This document shows positions 1-17,167 of a stretch of DNA of 17,167 bases, in pieces. The stretch lies in contig BCKQ01000026.1 in assembly GCA_001600695.1 (NCBI GenBank), positions 38,567-55,733 of the forward strand. Direction: 5' to 3'. This DNA comes from Ascoidea asiatica JCM 7603. Taxonomy: Eukaryota > Fungi > Ascomycota. Below the pieces are notes generated by a model. It saw nothing but the letters and a program-made list of their open reading frames with translations, had not been told where the DNA came from and ran no database searches. Positions within the stretch are counted from its first letter, which is position 1, and each line of letters starts with the position of its first letter. The position numbers and the translations under genes are program-made.

Positions 1-273
1 GACAGATTTTTTGAAAACATAAAGTATTACAAATTAATAGGTTCAGTGATCGAGAAGTTACAATTTGCGATAGAAAGAACTTTTGAGAATGGTTTCAAAG
101 TTACTAAAAGATCTTCAAAAGATCTTCAAAATTCTCTAAAAATTCTTGGTCTAGGAACTTTACTTTTTAAAGAGTTGACAACGAAAAATATTGGTTTTCC
201 CATATTTGATCATTTGCTGTATTGCTTAAAAATTACTCAAGATCAATTTTTTGCTCATATTAATGATTCATGA
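1..273 (+). CDS. Possible 3' end of an unidentified gene or pseudogene entering from the left edge
   Basis: Frame 1 is open from base 1 to TGA at 271-273 (DRFFENIKYYKLIGSVIEKLQF...AHINDS*), 90 codons in AT-rich DNA. No recognisable motif. Confidence 0.3.
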   Translation, partial: DRFFENIKYYKLIGSVIEKLQFAIERTFENGFKVTKRSSKDLQNSLKILGLGTLLFKELTTKNIGFPIFDHLLYCLKITQDQFFAHINDS

Positions 274-1193: not shown

Positions 1194-1958
1194 TTATATA
1201 TGAGCGTTTTCATGATGTTCAAAATAAAATATATCTTCTTCCATTATTCTTGAGTTTTGAGATAAATACTTTTTGGAAACTCTTAAAGGCGCATTTTCCA
1301 AATTTACGTCAGTTTTTGGCTCAACTGCCATTCTTTTCTTTCCTTTCGGTTGTTTATGCTTCTTTTTCCTAATAGAAAATTTCATAGTTAGAGGCCTTAA
1401 TTTTGTCTTAGACGGTGCTTTTCTGGATTTTATAGGAGCAGAGTAGGAACTTGAGCACAAGTTCAAGTAATCCATTTTTGTGTTATACCCACTCCCAAAT
1501 CTAGTAGAAGCTGTTTTCGAGTCACCTTCTGAAGCATTGAAGCTATATATTAAATGCTCTTCTTCGTAAAGTACGTTTTCTAAATAAGCAAGATATTGAA
1601 AATAAGAATTGAAAAAAGAGCTTCGATTCCTCCACAAAAAAGATACAATTTTAGAAACGTCATCTGTAGTTCCATTTATTATCCTATTTAATGACATTCT
1701 TGCTATAATAAATTTGTTCCGAGGTTTTGATTTGATTTTTTTACCCTTCCTTTTGGTCTTCAGTGGCTCTTTATTTTTGCTTTGTTGAATATCATAGTTT
1801 ATGAAAGCGCACTCTTTTGCTTGTTTATTCTTGAATTGATTCGACGTTATACTTGATATAGCTGGAAAGCTTTTAGATTCGAGAAAAGATCCGTCTGAAT
1901 CAGTAGATTCTTCGAGCTGAAAGCATAAAGTGTTGTTACTCACAAATATATATTCCAT
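1194..1958 (-). CDS. MATa2: Mating-type HMG-box transcription factor a2-like (MATa2/MTLa2), 254 aa
   Basis: Residues ~78-140 (nt ~1539-1727) read KPRNKFIIARMSL...DVSKIVSFLWRNRSSFFNSYFQYLAYLE...H. This is the MATA-type HMG pattern (PRNxF..R; S+..s..W; Y..LA..E), preceded by a basic tract (KTKRKGKKIK). It co-occurs with an a1-type homeobox gene and does not match the alpha-box pattern (LNxFxAFRxYY). Confidence 0.8.
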   Translation of the reverse strand: MEYIFVSNNTLCFQLEESTDSDGSFLESKSFPAISSITSNQFKNKQAKECAFINYDIQQSKNKEPLKTKRKGKKIKSKPRNKFIIARMSLNRIINGTTDDVSKIVSFLWRNRSSFFNSYFQYLAYLENVLYEEEHLIYSFNASEGDSKTASTRFGSGYNTKMDYLNLCSSSYSAPIKSRKAPSKTKLRPLTMKFSIRKKKHKQPKGKKRMAVEPKTDVNLENAPLRVSKKYLSQNSRIMEEDIFYFEHHENAHI

Positions 1959-2302
1959 TTGAGATAATTTTTTAGCTATTAGTATGATTAAGCCCTTCTG
2001 TGAACAAGGTTTTAGTGTCTCTAAAAGTAATCTTGAAATCAGTGAAATATATTCTCAATAAGAATAAGTTTTCCAAAATATTATTACTAACATTACATTT
2101 GAAATTTCACTTAGTAAGGAGCCACTGACCCGTGGTTTTGGGTGGCAAAGAATATTCTCAAGTACTGGTACAGTCCTGAAGCTCCATTGCTAGAAAGGCT
2201 TACTTTGGAAAGCATTGCTATTTTTTGATTACACACAAAATTGAAATATTTCAATAAAAGTTGGGCTGACCTAAGTTTTTAACTTATCATGTAATCTTAA
2301 AC

Positions 2303-2310
2303 CACGTGAC
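2303..2310 (-). promoter_or_regulatory. GTCACGTG E-box (Cbf1/Tye7-type bHLH site) about 350 bp upstream of MATa2
   Basis: CACGTGAC on + is an exact GTCACGTG on -. Motif match only. Confidence 0.3.
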
Positions 2311-2365
2311 TTTCATAGTTAATTTTAGCTTACAAAGCTAAAGTAGAGATTTTTACAAACTGATT

Positions 2366-2411
2366 TAACGTGTAATTTCAGGTTTAGCGTGCAAAAACAA
2401 ATTACACGTTA
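2366..2411. repeat. 13-bp perfect inverted repeat with 20-bp spacer upstream of MATa2
   Basis: TAACGTGTAATTT (2366-2378) / AAATTACACGTTA (2399-2411), with imperfect pairing continuing outward. Confidence 0.7.
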
Positions 2412-3639
2412 TTTTGTCAGGTTCGTGTAAGTTTTTTTTGTTAAATTATAAGTTTTGCGCGCAAAAATAACTCCCCTTTTTAAAGTAAATTCAATCCACA
2501 ATTCCTCAACACGGTTAGTAAAAATAGTCTTCCGTCTTGTGGACATTTTTATAAAATCCCAAATTCATAAAACCGTTGTTATATAAAATTCAAAAACAAA
2601 TTCCATTTATAACGCTTTATTACGTGCAGATTTTGATGATAGCACGAGCCAGAGTACCGCTAAGTAAGTATTAGTGGTCAATCAGTAAATTCCGAGTGCT
2701 CCCAACCCTGAATGACTTTTATCAATATTTATCTGGAAGTCCAAGATTATTGGATGCAATATAATTTTTAACAACATCCATAAAACTGGCCTCCCAGTAA
2801 AAAATTGAAGAATTCCGCAATTTTGGTCTCAATTTACAAAATCCAAAATAATATTAAAATATTAATTAAATCCAAATAGATTATATCTACAATTGATATT
2901 CTATATTTATTGTATTTTTTTTGTTTCTTTCTATGTACTGTATATATATACGCATTTTTTATTCTACTTAATCTTTCTTTTTTCATTTCTTTTTTTTTTT
3001 GGATTACCGGTCACTCTATTATTTTCTTAATATTTTTATTAAAACTTATAGTTTCAACATTTATTCATATAACAATTATTCAATCATTATTATAAGGAAA
3101 TGACCTTCTATTTTAATTTATAAAAATCTTTGCAAACACAAATAAATATATACTTAAATTCAATTATTGCTTTATAATTTAAATTCAACATGGTTGTCTC
3201 TCGGAATTTCAAAATTTCATTATCAAATAACTATGGAAATGACAAATCTTCCCCAGAGAATTTACTTTGACATGTTCTTTCACATGTTCCGATTGATACA
3301 ATAAATCATTCAAACACCTTTATCGATGAAATCTGTTTACAATAAAAATGCTGATTGCCAAGACAGTATGTGCTGTTTAGCACTTTTATACGTGCCTCGC
3401 TGCAACATATCTGTTGGGATTCTTGAGACATAATGGAATAAATTAAGTTGGTTTAGTGTAACAATTACTAAGGTTCATGAACAATGATGTCAATATTATA
3501 ATTTGAATGATAATAAATATTAGGTATTAATATATGTAATTTAATAAATATAAAACTCGATAATTTCAAAGCGAAATAAAATTAAAAAGCGTGGAGACAA
3601 CAACAAACATATTTATATAGTTTTGGGTACATCGAGCAA

Positions 3640-4052
3640 TCAATTTTCTTCATCACTTGAAAAGTCAATAACTCTTAATTTTCGCTTTTTATTTTTAGTA
3701 CTTCTGTGGCCTCGGCGTAAAAATTCAGAGCTATAATTAACATCAAAACTCTCTAACAGCCAAGGCCAATTTTTAAAGGATAAACCATTCGGATTATTCC
3801 TTCATAGTTTGTTAATCAATTGCACTTTTGTTGAGTAATATTTGTGATACCAATATGGTTCTTCACAGCCGTTGAAAAGGAAATTATCCAATTTGTTTTC
3901 ATTTGAACTGGTCAATTATCTTCACAGTTTACCCAACGTTTTGGATTTAATGCTTTCTTCATAATTGATTCTTCCGATTGGCTACCAACCAGTGAGGGAT
4001 TAAAGGGAAATGCAACATTTGTTGCTTGTCAACAAGTAGGTGGAGCAGCCAT
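3640..4052 (-). pseudogene. Candidate decayed ~137-codon ORF of unknown family
   Basis: AAAAATGGCT start. Reads MAAPPTC*QATNVAFPFNPSLVG...KRWVNCEDN /frameshift near 3915/ LTSSNENKLDNFLFNGCEEPYWYHKYY...NKL*RNNPNG...KNKKRKLRVIDFSSDEEN*. Two in-frame TGA and one frameshift; flanked by AT-rich noncoding tracts. Confidence 0.4.
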
Positions 4053-4131
4053 TTTTAGTTGAAGTAATTTTAGTAATATTAGTGACTGAAGGAAAAGAAA
4101 AAAAAAAGAAAAAGATTAACTCAAATATTTT

Positions 4132-4171
4132 TGACAACGAGTGACAACGAGCACCAACAACTGACAACACA
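4132..4171 (+). repeat. 10-bp-period tandem repeat, 4 units (3 with TGACAAC)
   Basis: TGACAACGAG TGACAACGAG CACCAACAAC TGACAACACA. Confidence 0.7.
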
Positions 4172-4206
4172 TATATTGAACATCCAACATTCAATATAAA
4201 AAATAA

Positions 4207-4214
4207 GTCACGTG
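4207..4214 (+). promoter_or_regulatory. GTCACGTG E-box (Cbf1/Tye7-type site) upstream of the AGE1-like gene
   Basis: Exact GTCACGTG. Motif match only. Confidence 0.3.
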
Positions 4215-4425
4215 TCATAGTTGAAATATATTTGAATTAAACTTAAAAGAAATAAAAATAAAGAAATAATAATTGCCTGTAAAAGCATAAAAAGAAAAAG
4301 TAAAATAAATGAAAACAATTTTAACAATATCATTGGGCATCCTGCATTTAAACTACGTAACATTACTGGTAAGCAAATAAATAGTAACTTCCTAATAGCT
4401 AATAGTTAAATGTAAAGTCTTCTCT

Positions 4426-4432
4426 CGGGTAA
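4426..4432 (+). promoter_or_regulatory. Reb1-type site (CGGGTAA) about 430 bp upstream of the AGE1-like ATG
   Basis: Exact CGGGTAA followed by T-tracts, a typical yeast nucleosome-depleted-region layout. Motif match only. Confidence 0.3.
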
Positions 4433-4863
4433 GAACAGGTTTTTTATCACGTTTTTTGTTTTACTATTTTGGCGATAAAGTACTGTACAGGTCGCATCTA
4501 TTGTTTGCTTTGTTTGGATCTACATGATTAAGTGTGTGAACTGATAATATTGATCACCTGTTAACTTTTATCATATTATCAGACATTTTTGTTGTTGTTA
4601 AATTCTATGGATGTTAGAGTTATTATCAAAAAAGAAAGAATGTTGACGATTGTCAAACACTATTATTTGGGATAACACTAATAATTTTTTTCCTAATATT
4701 CTACTAACTAAATTCCAAGGAATAAGTTGTTTGTTGAATTATTCTTCTTTGGGTAGCCTATTTATAAATTTTGCAACATTCAGAGTTTTAACTCGAGATA
4801 TATGAAGAAATCAACTTGAATCCGATAATATTTTATTATTTCTACCTAAAAACAATATTTATT

Positions 4864-7800
4864 ATGGGACAAGTTTATAGCAAAGAAAAAGATAAAATAT
4901 CTTCCAAAAGAAATGTCCATCTTGCTCTTTCAAATTCTAAATCATTTAGTATCAATAAAATGATCATAAAAAGAAGAAAGCAGTTAGCAGAAAGCAATTC
5001 TGTTTCTGGTGAAACTTTACCGGGAGTTATACAAATAACAAACGTAGATAGTGAATTAGTAGTACAAGGATTTGAGGGGGAGAAGAAACTACCATGCCAG
5101 TTTATACAAAATATGGATATAGAAGAATTTTTTTCTGCTTTTTTGCTTCAAATTCCATCTTTTTCTAGAATTGGCTTTATTTTTGAATCATCACAAGAAT
5201 TTTTAGACACCATGCAGAAATCAGAGAAAAATTTGCATCAAAGTGCTCCTAATGATTTTCTGTTTTCGGAAGAATTTAGTTTCGAACCTACTGGCTTTGA
5301 AAGCAAATTTAATGGTAAGCAGACTGAATTATCTGAAAGACACAATTCAGATCCGAGCCCAAGTGATAGTTGTCTTCGTAATAAATCCAAATCACCTCAT
5401 AATTCGCCAAGGGCTTTTCAGATGGAAAAACCAGAAATTACTGGCCCAGCTGAAGTATCAACCATTTTGGTTTTCAAGCTGTTGTTAATGGTAAGAGGAA
5501 GATGTCTTTCTGACGTCAAAGCTAAACTAGATATTGTTAGAAATGGAGGATTATTGCCAGACGATCTCGATCCTGATATTAAAATAATTGGAGATGTCTT
5601 TAAGGAAACAGATTTTTCTGTTGATACTATTGAGCAAAACATCAACCCTTCAAAAGATTCAATCCAACTCACTGATACTACACATCTCTCATTTTCGAAT
5701 ATAAAAAAGTCATTCAAGTTTTCATTTGTCTATGATGTACCGTTGGATTCAAGTGGAAAATATATTTATTCTATTTATTCCCAGAATCCAAGAGATGATT
5801 CTTTCGTTGAACTTGCTACTTTTTGCTTATGGGTTACTCGATCAATATTATTAGGAGATGCTCCTCTTTTTCCAATAAATAAGACCCAAAGTGAAACTTT
5901 GATGGAAAAGCCACTCAGGGAAGTGTTAACAGATAGTTCAAAAACAGTGAATAATCTCAATGACCATGAGGAATTTTTTCCGAAAACCGCTCTTGGTAAA
6001 TTATTATTTGAAATACAGAATAACTCTTCAAATTCCGCTTCAAGTATTTATTTGAATGATGTTTCGCAATTAAAAGAAGCTACTACATTTTGCTGGGAAT
6101 TAAGTAGTCAGACAAATGATATATTGAAAGAAAAAAGCTCTATGGACAAAATTTTCTTAAATTATCTTAATAAATTAAAATCATTATGTTTAATAGTCGA
6201 GCATTTAATTGAGTTCTCAAAGAAAAAACGATTTGGTTATGCTTTGCAAAAACTTATGAGTAAGTTGCTTGATATATTTACCATTCGAGTGAGTTTGCTT
6301 CAAGAGGAACAGGATATTTTTAATATTTCTTTTAGCAGACTAGTCGAGAGTTTTTCGATAAGCTCAATCGATAATTTTTTAAAAGCAAGCAAATCAGCAA
6401 TGGTAGATGCAGAAAACTACAATTTTTCTATAAAATCGTACATGGATGAGCTTTCAAATCCTCCAGATAGATCTCTGGAGATTCATTTGTCAACATTAAC
6501 CAAGGGAATAAATGTCATGGAACTATCGAGTATCAAACAAAAACCCTCCACTCATTATTTATCAAAAGTTGGAAAAGCTTTTCAATTGTTAGATCAATGC
6601 CTTTTGGAATTAGAATCTGGTGATCAGGACATCTCTATAAATATTGATCAGAGTTTGATTAACAAATCTTTGTTCCTTTCCTATATGAAATTGATTAGAA
6701 ATATTCTTCTGAATTCATTTCGGGATAGGCTAAATTCTAATATGGTGTCTAATTTAAACACATGCATCCAGTATTATAGCAAATTATTCGATCAGTTGAT
6801 AGAAGCAGAGAGGCCTCAGAAGAAACCTGTAACTAACCTGAAAGTTGATTCCTTTCAATTGAACCCGGAAGATTCCTTCAATTCAAGTGCTTCAGAAAAT
6901 TTACTGTGTTCTAGAGGGAGTTTTAAACCTACATCTCTTAGAAGTGAAGAAAATAAACCTTCAAGAGAAGGTGTCTTATGGTGTTATGAAGCAGGTGGAA
7001 AGCCTGGATGGCAAAAGCAGTGGGTATCATTATCAAATGAAAATTTAAAAGGTTATGTTGGAATAAAAGATGGAGAATTAAAGTTGGTCTCAAGCTTTTG
7101 CTGTTATTCTGGAACTGTTAGAAGCTCTGATTTCTTAAATGACAGAAGATTTTGCTTTGAGGTAAAAACAACAACAGGCTCTAAATTGTTTCAGGCTTCA
7201 TCTGAGGCTGACAGAGATTCTTGGTTAGCTGCTATAAAACTTGTTTTAAATCAAAATAATATCCTCGGAAATATACCTAAAAGCCGACATTCTCAAAACT
7301 CTAAAAATAACTCATTGTCATCTCCAAAATCAAAATTGAAAGATGTAGTACCTTTTAAAGAAGAGAAATTTTCTGCTCTGCCAGTTAATGAAGTTAACTT
7401 TCTTCGACTAGTGAGAGAGAATGACGAAAGCAATAAATATTGTTGTGATTGTGGGTCCGAAAAGTCAGTTGAATGGATTTCAATAAATTTATTAGTTGTA
7501 CTTTGTATAGATTGTGCTGGTGTTCATAGAAGTCTCGGAGCTCATATAACCAAAATAAGGTCCCTTACTTTGGATATTTCAGTTTTCACTCCAGAAATTG
7601 TTAAATTATTACATTCTGTTTGTAATAGGCTAGCAAATTCCTACTGGGAATTCTTGTTGCAAGACAAACGCAAATTAATTTTTCCCACCGTTTCTGCTGC
7701 TATGCGATCAGACTTTATATCAAATAAATATAAGAAAAAGTTGTATATTGAGCATGATATAAAAGTTAATAATCATCTTATTTATGGGATACATTCAAAT

Positions 7801-8193
7801 AACGTTCTTTTGATATTGAGATCATTGGCTAATAATGGAAATCCTAACATGCTTGTTATAAAAGGTAAGAATAAAGAAGTAGAGTCTACATTATTGGAGT
7901 ACTCTTTGACACATTTTTCTGGAAGCAAAGAAACTCCAGTGTTTGATATTGCTGAGCTTTTGATTATTAATGGTGCATCTGTAGGAACAATAGTGTCCAA
8001 TAATCTAGACCTACTTCCCCTAGCAAAATCCTTTTGGCAATCTAAAATTGACCGATCTTTAGGTCTTACATCTTCAATTTCAAAACTGAATGAGGCAGCA
8101 GAAAATATTGGATCTTCTCAAAAAGTGCCAAATTCTATATTCAGACAGCCCCTTTTTAAAACCAGATTGCAGGTTCCTCTGAAGCGAAAATAA
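4864..8193 (+). CDS. AGE1: ArfGAP with PH domain and C-terminal ankyrin-like region, probable BAR-like helical region (centaurin-beta/AGE1/Csx2-Cnt5 type), 1109 aa
   Basis: First ATG is at 4864 (the track starts at an upstream TTG). PH domain ~6964-7240 (REGVLW...WQKQWVSL...RRFCFEV...[16 protein letters not shown]). ArfGAP zinc finger from 7444, CDC-x17[24 protein letters not shown], with the catalytic Arg intact. Ankyrin-like [10 protein letters not shown]. The domain call is firm; the AGE1 orthology is less certain. Confidence 0.88.
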
Positions 8194-9065
8194 CTACAAT
8201 ACTTTGATTTTACAAACAAGTTTATTATCTTTTTTCTGAAAGTCTGAAAGATCAATCTAAATCCATATATAAATTTGAAATTAGATTTTTCTATAGTTCT
8301 GAATAGCACTTCAAATGTAGATATTTGCTTCTGTGGTCTTTTGATTATCAGTACTATTTTGAAAAGGAATGCCGCTATTCAGGAACAAAGCGAGAATTTT
8401 CTCATTCATTTTTCATTTGAAGCAGAAATACTATTATTTGAATAGTTTATAAATAAGAGCTGCAGTCCAAATAAATGAAATTATTACTAATGAAGTTAAT
8501 ACAAAGCATAATGTCTACTCTTGTGAAAATAAGAGGATGACCATCACAATAACGAAAAAAAGGAATTATAGCCAATTTGATAGGTTGAATAAGTCTATTG
8601 ATATCATCTCTTTGCTTGTTGAAAAGTAGATGATCATTCACTTATTGTTTTCATACTAAGTAAGCTCAAAAATTAAACCGTAGATTGATCGATAATTCAT
8701 TTTTTAGTGAAAATTGATGTCGCTTTTCTTATATTTGCTTGATCATAACAGATATAAATATAATATATTCAGTGCTACATAATCTTTCTTTCGCTAGCGT
8801 TTCTCAGTTAGCAAGTCTATTTAAAAATAAAATACAAAAGAAAAAAAAGTTAATAATTAGTAAATGAAATTAACACTTCTTAAGATCCTATTTCATTAAG
8901 AACTGAAAGACTATTTTTATATCACCTAACAGTTTTCATAACTAATTATTGATGTATTGATGGTACATAGGTATGGTTATAGTGGGACTGTTTTAAAACA
9001 ATAATTTCCATTAAGTTTGCACTCTAAAAAAGTCTTTTAATTATGTCTTTGCTTTTCTTCAAATA

Positions 9066-9229
9066 CAAACACAGGCCCTCTATAAACTGAACATCGGAAA
9101 GCGCAGATCCCCAAACATCCACATCCAATTGCCATCCATCATCCATACTGCCATTTCCCTGCCATCCACCGTGTTTCAGGTTCTGTGTATAATTCCCGCG
9201 TTCAGTTTATAGAGGGTCTCCAAACACAG
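9066..9229. repeat. Foldback element: ~46-bp imperfect inverted arms (17-bp perfect core) around a C-rich CATCCA-repeat loop, flanked by a 9-bp direct repeat (MITE-like or structured RNA)
   Basis: CCCTCTATAAACTGAAC (9076-9092) / GTTCAGTTTATAGAGGG (9200-9216). Arms extend imperfectly over ~9073-9117 / 9172-9219. CAAACACAG occurs at 9066-9074 and 9221-9229. Confidence 0.75.
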
Positions 9230-10768
9230 AGTTGTGTTATGAATATTTCCTATAAACGAAAGCAAAAATTTATCTATTACACTCACTTTTATTTCTGAAT
9301 TATCAATATTAAAAGACTTTTTTTTCCAACTTATTCAGTATTATTAACGTTACGATAACAAAAAAATAGTTGTGCCAGTAACGTGGTGCTACAGAGAATA
9401 TGGCTCCAAAACAAGCATCTTAAAGGAAATTTATTTGGGCTAAACGATAGGATGGAGATTACTTGTGGCCAGGCTTCCTTTTTACAGGGACAGCAATCAC
9501 CCAAAAAGAATTCGTCCCCTCAGACGATTTTATCGGGTTGAAACAGCTCATAAAAACAATTTGTAGCATATCCCAAACTAGAAAAATTAATTATGATTTT
9601 AAATATTTAAAAAGAACCGTATGATTCAACTACTTAAGAGCTTTCCAAAAAAAACTTATCAAGCTCAAATAACATTTCAAAATTACACTGGCTTCGAAAA
9701 TCTCTTCGCTAAGAGTTGTTCTACTATCAGTGTGAATGTTTCCTGGAAATGAGAACAATCTTTCGGTAGAAGTGGTAGTAGCCTGAACAGCTACGAGCTG
9801 AAAAACCACATCAAAATGAAAGGGACATTGCTTTCCTATACAATTCCGGAATTCAACTATTTTTACTGAATTGTTTTATGTGTTTCTGAAAACAAAAGAA
9901 CTTTGGCATTTTTCAAATTGAGCTGGTGAAAATTATTCTAATGTATTCCTTAGTAATCAAACTACAATTCCGGGATATTCAGATGTATTCCTCAAAAAAA
10001 TGCTCAATTAGGTAATTACGAAGCGGAAATCAAACCGTAGTCTGGTAATGGCGGAAAATGATTACTTTGATTACTTTCTATTCACCCTACTTACCATAGC
10101 TCATTATAAATGGACAAAAAAAAGGCAGATATATTCTACAACTCAGAAGATAAAAATTCTGTTCCGAAAAGTTTTTTATCAAAGACTTTCACGTGTAATA
10201 TTTTTTAAACAAAGCAAAAAAAATTGTTAAACTTTTTTTTGAGTTGATAGAATTTAGAATATTTGTTCTAGTTTCAAAGGGTAATCTTATTCAAATATTT
10301 TATTCACTAAGTTGTAAGAATATCCGCCTTTTTTTGTCCATTTATGATGAGCTATGTCAGTTTGGTTATTATCAGCATGATCTCAGTTGAAGTCAAAATA
10401 TGCTTGAGATGTTTTTTCCGTCCTCCGGAAATCTAAGGTTCTTTGACTTTTGATGCAACAGGTAAAAGATCTTTGAATTGTTACAAGACTAACAATAAAA
10501 TATTTAGCCGGTAAACTGTTAAAAATCATTTTCTTTGAAATTAATGAACAGATAACTTTGATTATTAACATTTAGAACTCTTTTTAAAAAACAAAGCAGA
10601 CCTCAAGCAAAATAAATGCTAAATTAAAAACATTTCTTCTGAAAAAAGAAAATAGTACCTAAAGTTTATTAATACACAATTAACTGTTATCCATAAAGTT
10701 TTTGAAAGTTACATTTTAGTAAAAAAGTAAAGTCAGATTCTATTCCTTGTTCTATAAACTTATCTATT

Positions 10769-13036
10769 ATGAAACAAAGTGTTCATACAATTATTGAAAA
10801 GAAACTCAACAATTTATCTTCAAATAAAAATTGTTTGGAAACAGAGAAGCGTCAAAAAAGTTTTGAGAGCAATATTCATCATTCCAAAAAAGGGGCTAAG
10901 AATCATCAAGGCATTTCGTTCCTTGAGCTGAATCAAGAAGTTGAAAGTAAGCCGTTACAAGAACAAGACAAATGTGCCCATATCCAAAGCTGTACTCATA
11001 ATATTAAAACCAAATCAAAGCCTACTCTGATGATAGATTCTGCATCAACTATATGGTCGTCGACTAAATCTGAATCTAATATTTCTTCGAATTTAGCCAT
11101 TAATCATAGTTCAATGTCTAGTTCTCCAAGTATGGTAAATAATTACTTTTGGTCCGATCCAAAATTTAGTATGTCATCCTTTGAGTCTGAAACCTCAAAA
11201 GTTTCCTCAAAAGAGAAAAATAATGAGATTTTCTATACTAATGCTTACCAAAAGCTAGAAGAAGGTACAATTAACTCACAGTTATCAAAACGTACCGGAA
11301 AGGTAAAAGATGCTTTTACAAAGTTTAAGAAAAATTTAAGGACAGCAAATGACTCAAAAGTTAATAGTAAAGGACCTGGTCTGGTTCAGGTATATTCTAA
11401 TGAGCTTATTAAAAGTTCAAATCCTGTGAGTAATATATCAAGGCCCTATAATTTGGAACATGTAGCCCATGTAGGTGTTGATTCTAATGGAACATATGTA
11501 GGACTTCCTGAGCAATGGGCAAAGCTTCTAACAGCTAGTGGAATTTCAAAAGTAGAGCAAGATGAACACCCTTTAGCAATGAGAGATATAGTGTCTTTCT
11601 ATCAAAAAGCCACTACCACAAATCAGGAAGAAAGAATGTTGCAAAAATTACATTTTGAGAATTCCCCAAAATTTTCTGAGTTTTCTACTGTTTCTATTGA
11701 TAATTTGTCAGGACTTCAAAATTCTTCAATTTTCCCAAACTGCGGTACTATTGAAAGTCTTCATTCCCAAAAAATTGCTAACAAGTATGGCTCAAGGGAT
11801 AATAATTATTTAGCTAATATTTCTGATACCCATTTCATACCTTCAAGACCAGCACCAAAGCCTCCTAAATCTAAACTAGTTTGTCTTGATTATCTGAAAA
11901 CCCAAGATTCAAAAGTCAATGTTTTGAAAATTTCGGAACAAAGTTCAACACAAGATCAGATTTTTGATAAATTAATTCACCAAGATTCAAAAACTACTTT
12001 AAGAAGCATTTCTTCGGCTAGAACCATCAGTGAAGGACCAATAGATATATCGAATGATTTTCATCAACAGCTCTCCCAAAAAGAACCTGAGATTATTGAG
12101 GGGAATATCCTAGATTTTCGATTAAATAAAAAACAAGAAGATACCTTGAAAGAGAAAGCTATTTATCAAAAGCTATTCGAGATTTGTTCTCAAGGGGATC
12201 CAAGATCTATATATAAAAATTTGGTAAAGATTGGACAAGGAGCGTCGGGTGGAGTTTACACTGCTACCTCTGCTGATTCAGACACATTTGTTGCGATAAA
12301 GCAGATGAATTTAAAAAAGCAACCAAAGAAAGAATTGATTATCAATGAAATTCTTGTTATGAAAGCTTCCAAGCATAAAAATATTGTTAATTTTATTGAT
12401 TCCTACTTATTGAAAGAAGAACTTTGGGTGGTAATGGAATATATGGAGGGAGGCTCCCTAACAAATGTCGTCACTCATAGTATATTGACCGAGGGTCAGA
12501 TTTCTGCAGTGTGTAAAGAGACTTTACAAGGTTTGAAATTTCTTCATTCAAGAGGTGTTATCCATAGGGATATCAAATCAGACAATGTGCTCTTGTCTAA
12601 TACAGGCGAAATCAAACTAACTGATTTTGGTTTCTGTGCTCAAATAAAAGATTCTAATCTGAAGAGAACGACCGTAGTGGGAACCCCATATTGGATGGCC
12701 CCAGAAGTTATATCTAAAAAAGAATATGGGCCTAAGATTGATATTTGGTCCCTAGGGATAATGACTATCGAAATGATAGATGGGGAACCACCTTATTTAA
12801 ACGAAAGTCCCTTGAGAGCCTTATATTTAATTGCAACTGTGGGAACGCCTGAATTGAAAAATAAAGAAGGTTTAAGTGATTCTATCAAAGACTTTTTGGA
12901 AAGATGCCTTGAAGTTGATCCAGATAAAAGAGCATCAGCACAAGATCTTTTGTTGGACAACTTTTTGTTAATCAATGATGCTAAAGAGTCATTATCTTCA
13001 TTGGTAGAATTAGCAAAATTACAGTCGGAGATTTGA
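10769..13036 (+). CDS. STE20: PAK-family Ser/Thr kinase Ste20, 755 aa
   Basis: CRIB ISRPYNLEHVAHVG plus autoinhibitory GLPEQWAKLL; FIPSRPAPKPP SH3-binding motif. Kinase motifs GQGASGGVY, VAIKQM, QPKKELIINE, HRDIKSDN, DFGFCAQI, GTPYWMAPE. No PH domain before the CRIB, so Ste20 rather than Cla4. Confidence 0.96.
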   Translation: MKQSVHTIIEKKLNNLSSNKNCLETEKRQKSFESNIHHSKKGAKNHQGISFLELNQEVESKPLQEQDKCAHIQSCTHNIKTKSKPTLMIDSASTIWSSTKSESNISSNLAINHSSMSSSPSMVNNYFWSDPKFSMSSFESETSKVSSKEKNNEIFYTNAYQKLEEGTINSQLSKRTGKVKDAFTKFKKNLRTANDSKVNSKGPGLVQVYSNELIKSSNPVSNISRPYNLEHVAHVGVDSNGTYVGLPEQWAKLLTASGISKVEQDEHPLAMRDIVSFYQKATTTNQEERMLQKLHFENSPKFSEFSTVSIDNLSGLQNSSIFPNCGTIESLHSQKIANKYGSRDNNYLANISDTHFIPSRPAPKPPKSKLVCLDYLKTQDSKVNVLKISEQSSTQDQIFDKLIHQDSKTTLRSISSARTISEGPIDISNDFHQQLSQKEPEIIEGNILDFRLNKKQEDTLKEKAIYQKLFEICSQGDPRSIYKNLVKIGQGASGGVYTATSADSDTFVAIKQMNLKKQPKKELIINEILVMKASKHKNIVNFIDSYLLKEELWVVMEYMEGGSLTNVVTHSILTEGQISAVCKETLQGLKFLHSRGVIHRDIKSDNVLLSNTGEIKLTDFGFCAQIKDSNLKRTTVVGTPYWMAPEVISKKEYGPKIDIWSLGIMTIEMIDGEPPYLNESPLRALYLIATVGTPELKNKEGLSDSIKDFLERCLEVDPDKRASAQDLLLDNFLLINDAKESLSSLVELAKLQSEI

Positions 13037-13966
13037 TTTGACAAAGGATAATTAAATAAAAAATTCAAAACTAGGTTGAATTAACAGTAAAAACTAACAG
13101 TTAGTTTCGTGTTTTTCGTTGAATGTCTTTTTTGGAGAGACTCTTTTTACCTTGGTATACTTCAAAGATAATTTCCTTGTTTTGCATAGTGAGATATCCG
13201 TAAATTTAAAAAAAATACTCTACCTTCAAGTAGATAATATGTTGGTAAAGAATATCTAGAAAATCTTGTTTTGGGCTTAGGCCCTGGGTGTAATAAATCA
13301 ATGCGTCTCCTAAAATACTTCAATTTCTGTTGGACTTTAGAAATATCAAATCTGTTCATTTCTAATTGAATTATCTATTTTTATCTATAACTGAGATCTA
13401 CGTGGTAACTGGAAACTTTTAGCTAATATTGAAAATCTTTGATTTGCTAATTCTCTCAGATATTTTGAACTGTTGTCAAATTATTGTTCGCTAGCTTTAA
13501 AAGGTTGTGATTATCTTGTCTAATCTCATTAGCAATAAAATTTTTTTCTGAGTTTTGAAATAGAAAAACAACAACATAATTGAAGTTGACTCTTTTTTGA
13601 GTTTGTGATCTATTTTCGTTAACTTTCAATCCGTTCATTTATTTTAGGCTGTTGTGATTTTATATAATATATTTAGATGCTTGTTATGTTTCATTATATT
13701 ATAAATGTAATTGTAATAAAAATAAGCTTAAAAATAATGATAGAGTTAGTGAAAAAATTAGTAATAAAAATAGAAATAATCAAGAAAAAAGTATTTTATT
13801 GGATCTTCAAAAACAGCTAAAGGGGTTTTTGAAGATGATGTTTAAAAGATCCTACCAGAAACTCCATTTTATAACAAACTCATTGTTTGATTTTAAAAGT
13901 AAATCATTGATTTAGGAAAAGTTAGAATCAAATTAAAATTCAAATGCACAAAAGCCTTAAGCCTTA

Positions 13967-14798
13967 TCATTTCTTCCTCATACGTTTATTAGTAAACTGG
14001 ATTGATTGTCAGTAAATAACTCTTCAAAGAAATCATGTTTTCAAAAGGATTACATACCCATACATCAACTTGTTTTTTTGTTAGGTTCTTAGAATTAGCA
14101 ATTAATTTACGCTCTTCAGTATTTGGCGAAGGTCGTTTACTATAAATTTCCTCAAGAACTAATCTAGTACCTCTATCAAAAGTTGTTTTCCTAGTTGACT
14201 TTTCTTGTTCGGGGCAAGGCAAAGAAATATCAGATAAATTGTAAAGATAATCAGAGAAGTCTTTTTCGCTTGTGTCAATAACCAATTTATCTGGAAATTC
14301 ATTTGGAGGGTTGTTGAGGATGCAACAGTATTTCCAGGCTCCCTTTAATATACATTCTATGGTGCTCAAACATTTTTTTAAACACATTTCAGATATTGAA
14401 GAGCTTGATGAAAAATTTATATACTCTATTGATCTGTCAGGATGAATGGTTGAATACTTTGAAATTTGTTAGCTTGCCATCTCTAAAAGTTAAAAAAAAT
14501 ATCATATACATACCCTTTCTAGTTGGCTTTTGTAAATTTGAAGAAAAGAAAATAATTCTGAAAAAGTGTGCGCTAGCGAATCTGAAGTTTGCTTGTTTGA
14601 AGGATTATAATTTGCCATTGCATTTACAGACTCTTTGGTGGAGCATGAAAAATCGGGGAAAAATTTTTTAGTAAGAGAATCTATTTCAGAGAGATTACCC
14701 AATACTTCTTCAAGATAATTAGAAATTTCTTGTCCATTTTCTCTTACAAAATTTTCCTTTATCGTGCTTCTAGAGCCTGCTTTCAAGTTGTTGTTCAT
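13967..14798 (-). CDS. MATa1: Mating-type homeodomain protein a1-like (MATa1/MTLa1), 3 exons: 14798-14514, 14456-14058, 13996-13967; 237 aa
   Basis: Spliced C-terminus RKTTFDRGTRLVLEEIYSKRPSPNTEERKLIANSKNLTKKQVDVW|FTNKRMRKK* parallels S. cerevisiae a1 (...QVRVW|FINKRMRSK*), including the intron after VW. It has no TALE insertion and no WVSNRRR, so it is not alpha2. Both introns are phase 0 and restore one continuous frame of 714 nt. Confidence 0.9.
13997..14057 (-). other. MATa1 intron 2 (61 nt) within the homeodomain recognition helix
   Basis: GTATGT donor at 14057, TACTGAC branch point at 14014-14008, CAG acceptor ending at 13997. Removal creates W-F-T-N-K-R. Confidence 0.9.
14457..14513 (-). 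other. MATa1 intron 1 (57 nt) with AAG acceptor
   Basis: GTATGT donor at 14513, GCTAAC branch point at 14473-14468. The first AG downstream is AAG ending at 14457 and is in frame. The intron contains the TGA that ends the track's 106-aa ORF. Confidence 0.75.
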
Positions 14799-15305
14799 AT
14801 TTATAAATTTGAAATTAATCAAAATAGCCTATAGTATTTTTAAGAAGTGATCTTTAGAGATTATTATATTTTGCTTCCTCAAATTCCAAATTAACAGTTT
14901 TGAAAATATTTAAAAACCCTTATCGAATTGACAACACTTTCAAGAAGAAACTGGAAATTATCCTATTTTGTTCTGGCTAATAAATCTTTAAAATTGAATT
15001 ATTATTGAAGTGATTCATTTTTTCAAACCTTTGTTTTTTTTAGCGGACCAAGATAACGTTTTCTGAAACTCATCCATATTTTTCTTCAAATGGTCACCTG
15101 ATTGAGGTCTTTTATAAAACCGGTTAGTGAGATCACATGCTAGTTTACCGGATTAAAATTAAGGTCTCGTTTGCCAAAGCAGAGCATGTACAAAAGAGCG
15201 GAGTCAAAGCACTTTTTTCATGCAAATAGTCGAGGCAGCAAAACTTTTTGTTTCTATTTTATAGTTTTTGAACGTGATATAATATAATAACAGACTACAA
15301 AAGTT

Positions 15306-15312
15306 CGGGTAA
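15306..15312 (+). promoter_or_regulatory. Reb1-type site (CGGGTAA) in the divergent promoter between MATa1 and the 16285 ORF
   Basis: Exact CGGGTAA overlapping the palindrome GTAACGTTAC. Motif match only. Confidence 0.3.
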
Positions 15313-16284
15313 CGTTACATTTTAATTAACTTCTAAAATGCCTGAGCATTTCCAATCGCGGAAAAATGCTTCAACCCAGACAAGGGCAATCCTATTGTTT
15401 TATTAGTCATGTGATCATGTCAATTCCAAGACCTCGGTTTTAAGACAACCAATTATGAGTTCAATCAAACCCCTAAAAAAATACAAGCGATTTCAGTTTG
15501 CTTTTCAATAAAAGTGCAGGAGCTGAATGGGCTTGTTTGTTAGAGGTGCCCTTTTTTGACGTTTTTTTAAATGAATGTTACCTTGAAAATTAGGGAAATT
15601 GGTGAAACTTTTATGGGTAGTAGGGCTATATTTAAGAGCCCTATGTGTGTTTTTTTAGGGGTTTGACTGTAAAAGCGAGTAAGAGTGACAATTTTACATT
15701 TACCAGTTTGAATAATTCAAATAAAATTGCTATAGAAAGACGTAATCAAATATTTTCAAGCAAAACCCTTCTACTTAATCAATTATTTAAACTAAAAATG
15801 GACCTTACAATAGCCTACATTACTAACGGGCCTTAGAAAAGAAATTTCAGGTGTTTGTTGATGAATATTTTTGAATAACCTGTTTTCCAAAGGTTGAATA
15901 ATATGGAGTAAAATCTCGTTTCCTGAGGTGGAAAAACGAGTAAAACAAGAGAGTGTGGTTATCAAGACAAGAGGTCAAAATGTTTTACTCCCATGTCTGC
16001 TTTAACCTCACGTACAGTAAACCAAGAGATTCCGGACACGGTAAAATTTATTAAGGGTAAAGAGCTTATTTTGGGGTGTGTTGTTGTACTGTATCATACA
16101 TAGGCATGCCCCATAATTCTTTAAACATTACGTACGGGTTGCTGTGAAAGTTCGTAGTCTTCTTATTGTTGTTCAAAAATAATCCAACTGGATAATATTT
16201 TTATTAAATGAAAGATCTTTTTCAACAATAAGAAATCAAGAGTTATTTATATTAAAAGCCAAAAGAATAAATAAAAAGACAAAT

Positions 16285-17167
16285 ATGGCTAATTCCATGA
16301 TTAGTGATTTTAATATGAAAGATGAGCAATATCATAAAAAAAATGAATTCTTGGATAACCAAATTATATCAGACAATGAAATATCCTGGATTCTAACAGA
16401 AATTTTTGATAAAAGAGATAATTATTTAAATTTAGATTCGAATAATTCTTTAAATGATAATAAACAAAATTCTTTAAAAAATGATATTAATAATAAATCT
16501 CTAAATGATATACAACATGAACAATTTAAAAAAATAAATTCTGATATTAATTTAAAAATTAAACCAAATACTGATTCTAATGCTGATTCAAATAATAATT
16601 TGAAAGCTGATTTAAGAACATTATCAAAAACTTTGTCAAAATCAGATTCAAAATATTTATCCAATACATTATCTTTAACAAAAACTGATACAAGTAAAAG
16701 TTTTTTTAATAAATTTCATTTTAATAAAAAAGATAAAGATAAAGAATTATATAGATCAAAAACTTTTTCTCAAGATAATTCAAATACTAAAACAATTAGG
16801 AAAAGAACAAATTCCGCAAGTAAAATCAATCTAAATTCTTCAACCTTATTAACAAGAAAATTATCTTCTTTATATACTTCAAAAAAAAATTTAAATGATT
16901 ATAATAATATCAATAATTCCCTTAATTCTCCTAATTCTCCTAAATCTCCTAAATCTACTGATTCACCCAATTTAATCAATTCAACTAATTCAATTAATTC
17001 AAATAATTCATCCAATTCAAATAATTCTAATAATTCAAATAATTCAAAAGAATTAAGGGATTTAAGATTAACTGAATTTCTAAAAGTTTATAATTCAAAA
17101 ACAAATGATTATCAAAATAATTTTTTAAATAATTTAAATAATCTAGGTAATAGTTATAATAGGAATA
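16285..17167 (+). CDS. Asn/Ser/Lys-rich low-complexity N-terminus of an unidentified protein (partial, runs off the window; absent from the ORF track)
   Basis: ATG at 16285 (MANSMISDFNMKDEQYHKKNEFLDNQIISDNEISWILTEIFDKRDNYLNLDSNNS...). Open for 294 codons to the window end despite extreme AT content, which is very unlikely by chance. Confidence 0.85.
   Translation, partial: MANSMISDFNMKDEQYHKKNEFLDNQIISDNEISWILTEIFDKRDNYLNLDSNNSLNDNKQNSLKNDINNKSLNDIQHEQFKKINSDINLKIKPNTDSNADSNNNLKADLRTLSKTLSKSDSKYLSNTLSLTKTDTSKSFFNKFHFNKKDKDKELYRSKTFSQDNSNTKTIRKRTNSASKINLNSSTLLTRKLSSLYTSKKNLNDYNNINNSLNSPNSPKSPKSTDSPNLINSTNSINSNNSSNSNNSNNSNNSKELRDLRLTEFLKVYNSKTNDYQNNFLNNLNNLGNSYNRN
16924..17046 (+). repeat. Coding 9-bp-period repeats (NSP NSP KSP KST; then NS-x / NNS repeats)
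   Basis: AATTCTCCT AATTCTCCT AAATCTCCT AAATCTACT at 16924-16959, followed by repeated AATTCA-xxx units. Confidence 0.7.

What the first reader, a model, noticed from the sequence alone, without database searches (positions are those of the whole stretch)
1194..14798. Expanded yeast MATa locus that appears to have captured STE20 and an ArfGAP gene between a2 and a1
Seen: a2-like HMG and a1-like homeobox genes on the same strand ~12 kb apart, enclosing intact STE20 and AGE1-like genes. Established: in most budding yeasts a1 and a2 are adjacent. The Candida clade MTL carries extra allele-specific PAP/OBP/PIK genes, and mating-type-specific STE20 alleles are known from the basidiomycete Cryptococcus MAT locus. 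Inference: this is an independent recruitment of a pheromone-pathway kinase and a membrane-traffic regulator into an ascomycete MAT idiomorph, convergent with Cryptococcus. It predicts diverged a- and alpha-specific versions of STE20 and AGE1. I cannot tell from the window whether this arrangement has already been reported for this species.
Basis: partly seen in the sequence, partly recalled or inferred. Interest (0 to 1): 0.92.

Follow-up and report, generated by a model that had tools for sequence, protein, structure and literature searches.

The report
Known Ascoidea asiatica MATa mating allele
This is the "a" version of a yeast's sex-determining region, which carries its own copies of two ordinary genes (STE20 and AGE1); the arrangement is real but was published for Ascoidea asiatica in 2019.

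Summary
The window reads a2 (−), AGE1 (+), STE20 (+), a1 (−, three exons), then an MHP1-like ORF. Krassowski et al. 2019 (PMC6692504) report this order for the MATa allele of Ascoidea asiatica. They also report divergent, inverted AGE1α and STE20α (~50% identity) in the α allele.

Tests here: a2 homologues sit in canonical MAT loci. a1 shares a homeodomain intron with A. rubescens a1. AGE1's best hit is A. rubescens. Public contigs show a second allele that joins the same right flank and carries an inverted STE20-like kinase, about 80% identical in DNA, with mostly silent changes. The species is inferred, because organism names were coded.

Details not in the paper's text: the right boundary lies at about 16393, inside the MHP1-like ORF, and a2 lacks the intron of A. 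rubescens a2. The left boundary is unresolved, as the a-allele contig starts at 4301. The scan noted the α allele on another piece of this genome (s1-608932). Other notes there claim a five-intron α2 that the paper did not find; I could not test this.

The parts
1..273 (+). 3' end of the left flanking gene (ADR1 according to the paper; identity not confirmed here)
   Evidence: Open frame from the window edge to a stop at 273; no Pfam hit; no match in fetched A. rubescens DNA; named from PMC6692504
1194..1958 (-). MATa2, HMG-box transcription factor, 254 aa, lacks the HMG-box intron of A. rubescens a2
   Evidence: best hit is the A. rubescens gene beside a1; other hits are Candida anglica MATa2 (PAP-OBP-PIK-a2-a1) and a W. 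pijperi gene linked to SLA2
4864..8193 (+). AGE1a, PH + ArfGAP protein, 1109 aa, intact
   Evidence: Pfam ArfGap E=1e-29, PH E=7e-9; best hit A. rubescens E=1.5e-135; same Met-Gly-Gln start
10769..13036 (+). STE20a, PAK kinase (PBD + kinase), 755 aa, intact
   Evidence: Pfam; top yeast hits named STE20/CST20; inverted second allele on another contig
14514..14798 (-). MATa1 exon 1 (95 codons); intron 1 = 14513-14457, 57 nt
   Evidence: GTATGT donor at 14513, CTAAC branch, AG acceptor, phase 0
14058..14456 (-). MATa1 exon 2 (133 codons, most of the homeodomain); intron 2 = 14057-13997, 61 nt
   Evidence: Pfam Homeodomain E=5e-8; 33% identity to A. rubescens a1, E=1e-9 pairwise
13967..13996 (-). 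MATa1 exon 3 (9 codons + stop), end of helix 3
   Evidence: Intron after the helix-3 Trp at the same place as in A. rubescens a1; both next exons begin FTNKR
16285..17167 (+). 5' part of the right flanking gene, MHP1-like; about the first 36 codons are allele-specific
   Evidence: ORF from ATG 16285 runs off the window; weak match (z about 4, 0 of 300 shuffles) to the RNI-like gene that follows AGE1 in A. rubescens; named MHP1 in the paper
16345..16423 (.). Right boundary of the allele-specific region: last a/alpha difference at 16393, shared sequence from 16394
   Evidence: The a contig and the second-allele contig both end at 16423, overlapping one shared contig that starts at 16394, in three data sets (tables 3, 5, 8)

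Best explanation
The window is the MATa allele (idiomorph) of the heterothallic diploid yeast Ascoidea asiatica: MATa2-AGE1a-STE20a-MATa1, followed by an MHP1-like gene. a2 (HMG) activates a-specific genes and a1 (homeodomain) acts in a/alpha cells (established knowledge of yeast MAT genes, not tested here). Shown: in the outgroup Saccharomycopsis crataegensis AGE1 and STE20 lie on different contigs, neither near MAT genes, whereas here both are inside the a allele and a second allele has an inverted, diverged STE20. Inferred: the MAT genes, AGE1 and STE20 came together beside MHP1 in the Ascoidea lineage. Inversions then stopped recombination between the alleles, and the trapped genes diverged into a and alpha versions. 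Both were kept intact because each haploid carries only one. I give about 0.6 to capture by position with broadly equivalent alleles, and about 0.3 to mating-type-specific specialisation.
For: Gene order and strands match the published description. a2 identity; a1 identity and shared intron; STE20. Closest a2 and AGE1 relatives are from A. rubescens. An 11,656-bp second contig joins the same right flank and holds a colinear inverted kinase at 78-80% DNA identity. 14 of 19 listed differences are at third codon positions and 14 of 18 affected codons are synonymous. Contig depths of the two alleles roughly add up to that of other contigs (25+22 vs 45-50 in X2; a weak indicator by the tool's own caveat). 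Outgroup positions of AGE1 and STE20. A. rubescens keeps AGE1 next to an RNI-like/MHP1-like gene in the same orientation.
Against: Organism names in the read tools are coded, so the species is inferred from gene order, nearest relatives, assembly size (about 20 Mb) and a 2016 data set. ADR1 identity of the left ORF fragment was not confirmed and MHP1 only weakly. AGE1alpha and MATalpha1 were not seen directly. The a contig begins at 4301, to the right of a2, so a2's place inside the allele-specific region rests on the paper. No RNA data.
Confidence: 0.93

Rival explanations
1. The same arrangement in a sister Ascoidea species (e.g. A. tarda, A. xinghuacunensis), which would extend the known pattern to a second species.
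For: Species names are hidden; no exact protein match was found in the collection.
Against: The sequence is held by a 2016 data set with about 20 Mb of contigs, which by my recollection fits the RIKEN A. asiatica assembly (71 scaffolds). Gene order, orientation and diploid a/alpha state match the paper's strain.
Confidence: 0.04
2. Misassembly, or a plain rearrangement in which STE20 and AGE1 are single-copy and shared by both mating types.
For: The a2-AGE1 junction was not tested on reads, and there is a contig break at 4301.
Against: 11300-16423 is one contig with 0 differences in three data sets from two studies. A second, about 80% identical inverted STE20-like gene joins the same flank. 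The paper reports both AGE1 alleles.
Confidence: 0.01
3. One half of a two-locus flip/flop or primary homothallic system, with a and alpha genes on the same chromosome.
For: The relative A. rubescens is a flip/flop species; scan note s1-609015 suggested this.
Against: Both contigs converge on one shared right flank in the same orientation, each at lower depth, as alleles do. No long inverted repeat lies in the window. The paper classifies A. asiatica as heterothallic diploid.
Confidence: 0.02
4. The allele-specific region starts only at about 4330, so MATa2 lies in the shared flank and is present in alpha cells too.
For: The a contig is 12,123 bp in two data sets and starts at 4301; the alpha contig is of similar length (11,656 bp), as expected for a clean two-branch bubble.
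Against: The paper places a2 inside the a allele and lists none in the alpha allele. A short repeat shared with another locus would cause the same break. No scan note on the alpha piece mentions an a2 gene.
Confidence: 0.12

Closest known systems
Ascoidea asiatica MATa allele (Krassowski et al. 2019, PMC6692504, STAR Methods and Data S2A)
   Same: Order MATa2-AGE1a-STE20a-MATa1, MHP1 flank, diverged and inverted alpha versions, diploid a/alpha strain. Almost certainly the same DNA.
   Different: Nothing in gene content. The paper's text does not give the boundary inside MHP1, the a1 exon model or the missing a2 intron (its figure is not readable here).
Candida-clade MTL with PAP/OBP/PIK
   Same: Non-sex genes enclosed in the idiomorph as allele-specific versions; seen directly in Candida anglica PAP-OBP-PIK-a2-a1.
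   Different: Different genes and an independent event. In C. anglica a2 and a1 stay adjacent, while here the extra genes separate them.
Cryptococcus neoformans/gattii MAT locus
   Same: Mating-type-specific STE20 alleles inside MAT (PMC2873909).
   Different: Basidiomycete, over 100 kb and over 20 genes including pheromones, receptor, STE11 and STE12. Here about 16 kb, two extra genes, and no pheromone or receptor gene found.
Ascoidea rubescens flip/flop MAT (FF1)
   Same: Nearest a2, a1 and AGE1 homologues; AGE1 still followed by an MHP1-like gene.
   Different: a2 and a1 are adjacent and convergent at the end of a gene-poor 49.7-kb contig; STE20 is lost according to the paper.

Membership tests
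Budding-yeast MATa idiomorph | a2-type HMG-box gene | tested here: met
   no hit named Rox1/Ixr1 among the 9 found
Budding-yeast MATa idiomorph | a1-type homeodomain gene with the helix-3 intron | tested here: met
Budding-yeast MATa idiomorph | Dissimilar alternative allele joining the same flanks | tested here: met
   Right flank shown; left flank not tested
Budding-yeast MATa idiomorph | Ancestral SLA2/DIC1 flanks | tested here: not met
   No such ORF in the window. This is the ancestral position, not a requirement; the paper gives ADR1/MHP1 for A. asiatica
Budding-yeast MATa idiomorph | Determines mating type | not testable with these tools
   Needs crosses or knockouts
Published A. asiatica MATa allele | Order a2-AGE1-STE20-a1 | tested here: met
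Published A. asiatica MATa allele | STE20alpha diverged and inverted | tested here: met
   (two kinase-domain segments only)
Published A. asiatica MATa allele | AGE1alpha diverged and inverted | not tested
Published A. asiatica MATa allele | Flanked by ADR1 and MHP1 | tested here: inconclusive
   MHP1-like: weak support; ADR1: no confirming hit
Published A. asiatica MATa allele | DNA identity to assembly BCKQ01 | not testable with these tools
   No fungal genome collection; organism names coded
Ste20 (vs Cla4/Skm1) PAK kinase | PBD + kinase without an N-terminal PH domain; best yeast hits STE20 | tested here: met
Ste20 (vs Cla4/Skm1) PAK kinase | C-terminal G-beta-binding motif | tested here: inconclusive
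   Recognisable but altered: Ser where all 57 pattern-matched homologues have Pro
Flip/flop (FF1/FF2) MAT system | a and alpha genes on one chromosome between inverted repeats | tested here: not met
   Allelic structure; no long inverted repeat in the window

The most novel reading that the evidence does not exclude
The published map of this locus is incomplete, and the captured genes are functionally sex-specific. The allele-specific region reaches into the promoter and first codons of MHP1 (shown here). The alpha allele may hold an intron-rich MATalpha2 that the paper missed (scan notes only). STE20a, with its altered G-beta-binding motif, and STE20alpha may do different jobs in a and alpha cells. 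That would make this a two-gene ascomycete model for sexually antagonistic gene capture.
Probability: 0.25. Interest if true: 0.5.

Novelty: already known. Interest (0 to 1): 0.2.

Why it matters
It is one of few ascomycete cases in which ordinary genes were trapped in a mating-type locus and split into a and alpha versions, parallel to Candida PAP/OBP/PIK and Cryptococcus STE20. It therefore bears on how non-recombining sex-determining regions grow. But it was described in 2019, only in a methods paragraph and a supplementary figure, and my searches found no functional follow-up. The value left is a sharper map and a test of whether the two STE20 alleles are interchangeable.

Tried and rejected
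Word-indexed homologue search with a2: no hit (too divergent). Exact look-up of window proteins: none in the collection. Pfam for the a2 HMG box: not detected; the Atlas feature search gave only a lead (0.89). Rox1/Ixr1 identity rejected on homologue names and loci. CLA4 identity rejected (no PH domain; STE20-named hits). Flip/flop rejected (no long repeat; allelic junction). No tRNA and no Rfam family. No pheromone-like CaaX ORF (two chance-like hits). Walking 20 kb either side of A. rubescens AGE1 found no match to the left ORF fragment. BLASTP and the Atlas could not identify the Asn-rich right ORF. Spacer DNA has no tblastx or blastn match to fetched loci, so the suggested pseudogene at 3640-4052 has no support here. 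Searches failed on coordinate slips and were resent corrected.

Full report
Observation. The window holds four long ORFs plus a1 fragments. Pfam identifies 4816/4864-8193 as PH+ArfGAP, 10769-13036 as PBD+kinase, and 14387-13989 as a homeodomain. The AGE1 start is ATG 4864, which gives the same Met-Gly-Gln start as the A. rubescens and Saccharomycopsis proteins. Translations read CUG as Leu; in A. asiatica CUG is ambiguous Ser/Leu (PMC6041473), which affects 1, 9 and 5 codons of a2, AGE1 and STE20.

a2. Pfam misses the HMG box, but a full scan of 1.84 billion proteins gave 9 hits that share the HMG-like core. The best (E=9e-20) is an A. rubescens protein next to a homeodomain gene at the end of a gene-poor 49.7-kb contig, which fits the known MATa end of that species' flip/flop region. 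Another is named MATa2 and lies in PAP-OBP-PIK-a2-a1 of Candida anglica. A third, from Wickerhamomyces pijperi, follows SLA2 (ANTH/I_LWEQ), SUI1, CWC25 and a NAP-domain gene. None is named Rox1 or Ixr1. The window's a2 lacks the intron that A. rubescens a2 has inside the HMG box.

a1. Donor, branch and acceptor signals give three exons, 14798-14514, 14456-14058 and 13996-13967, with phase-0 introns of 57 and 61 nt. The second intron follows the helix-3 Trp exactly as in A. rubescens a1, and both next exons start FTNKR. Exon 2 matches A. rubescens a1 and C. anglica a1.

STE20 and AGE1. The top yeast hits to the kinase are named STE20/CST20, and there is no PH domain. The C-terminal G-beta-binding motif is recognisable but has Ser where matched homologues have Pro. 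AGE1's best hit is A. rubescens, then S. crataegensis.

Second allele. Three public data sets from two studies hold the sequence, each about 20-25 Mb of contigs. Laid on 11300-17167 (5,868 letters), one contig matches 11300-16423 with no difference; in two data sets it is 12,123 bp, i.e. window 4301-16423. A second contig of 11,656 bp matches 16345-16423 in the same orientation with 7 differences, the last at 16393. About 2.1 kb from that junction it carries two colinear kinase segments in the opposite orientation, at 78-80% identity. Both contigs end where a shared contig begins (16394). Of 19 listed kinase differences 14 are at third positions, and 14 of 18 codons are synonymous (one change lies in a small alignment shift). 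So an inverted, diverged STE20-like gene under purifying selection sits on the alternative allele, and the right boundary falls about 36 codons inside the ORF starting at 16285. That ORF is weakly similar to the RNI-like gene that follows AGE1 in A. rubescens, whose motifs I recognise from memory as Mhp1-like. The a contig's start at 4301 is unexplained: either a short repeat or the true left boundary. No further read-laying run was available.

Origin. In S. crataegensis AGE1 lies in an SMC-RSA3-PHD-AGE1-kinase-Recep_L-MT-A70 block, also seen in another yeast. STE20 is on a different contig, and neither has MAT genes within 10 kb. Both therefore left their ancestral sites in the Ascoidea lineage. 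The likely route (inferred) is co-location with the MAT genes beside MHP1, inversions that stopped recombination, and divergence under continued purifying selection. Coding DNA covers only 44% of the interval between the flanking genes, compatible with a non-recombining region but not proof of it.

What is known. Krassowski et al. [quoted passage not shown] One allele is MATa2-AGE1a-STE20a-MATa1 and the other AGE1alpha-MATalpha1-STE20alpha; the paired genes are in different orientations with about 50% identity, and no MATalpha2 was found. They draw the comparison with Candida PIK/PAP/OBP and give gene trees. Mating-type-specific STE20 in C. neoformans and C. gattii is documented in PMC2873909. 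The window is thus almost certainly the published allele; the species assignment is inferred, not read from a label.

Earlier scan notes. The alpha allele was noted on another piece of this genome (s1-608932). Several notes there describe a five-intron alpha2, which would contradict the paper. I had no access to that DNA, so it remains a lead.

Verdict. Real, correctly interpreted, already known. Interest 0.2; what remains open is the boundary map, the possible alpha2, and whether the two STE20 alleles differ in function.

Noticed in passing
window 16285-16423: The allele-specific region ends inside the MHP1-like ORF (last difference 16393), so that gene has a- and alpha-specific promoters and first codons.
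   Followed up: yes
window 4301-4330: The a-allele contig starts here in two data sets; it is either a repeat shared with another locus or the left boundary, which would leave a2 in the shared flank.
   Followed up: partly
run X1: Contig depths of the a and alpha alleles are 37 and 19 (about 2:1) in the 2023 data set but about 1:1 in both 2016 sets. This may reflect a/a/alpha cells or a mixed culture; the tool warns that depth is not copy number.
   Followed up: no
window 9073-9219: Foldback with 27-nt arms (z=-4.9 for 9060-9232), flanked by 8-nt direct repeats matching 7 of 8; MITE-like. No Rfam match.
   Followed up: partly
window 10095-10356 and 15462-15669: Two more foldbacks (28- and 24-nt arms, 96% and 92% complementary), without target-site duplications and unrelated to each other at 16-mer level.
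   Followed up: partly
window 15736-15826: A copy at about 85% identity exists on another contig of the genome: a small dispersed repeat between a1 and the MHP1-like ORF.
   Followed up: no
window 12977-13018: The STE20a G-beta-binding motif has Ser in place of the Pro seen in all 57 matched homologues.
   Followed up: partly
window 2368, 2401 and 10191: The 9-mer ACGTGTAAT occurs as an inverted pair upstream of a2 and once upstream of STE20; possibly a shared regulatory site. Chance level not computed.
   Followed up: partly
window 14014: a1 intron 2 has the branch sequence TACTGAC instead of TACTAAC.
   Followed up: no
another piece of this genome (notes s1-608952, s1-609039, s1-609081): Scan notes describe a five-intron MATalpha2 in the alpha allele, whereas Krassowski 2019 found none. 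Worth its own follow-up.
   Followed up: no
L001:3000-7125: A. rubescens has two adjacent, convergent MgsA_C (MGS1-like) genes upstream of AGE1.
   Followed up: no
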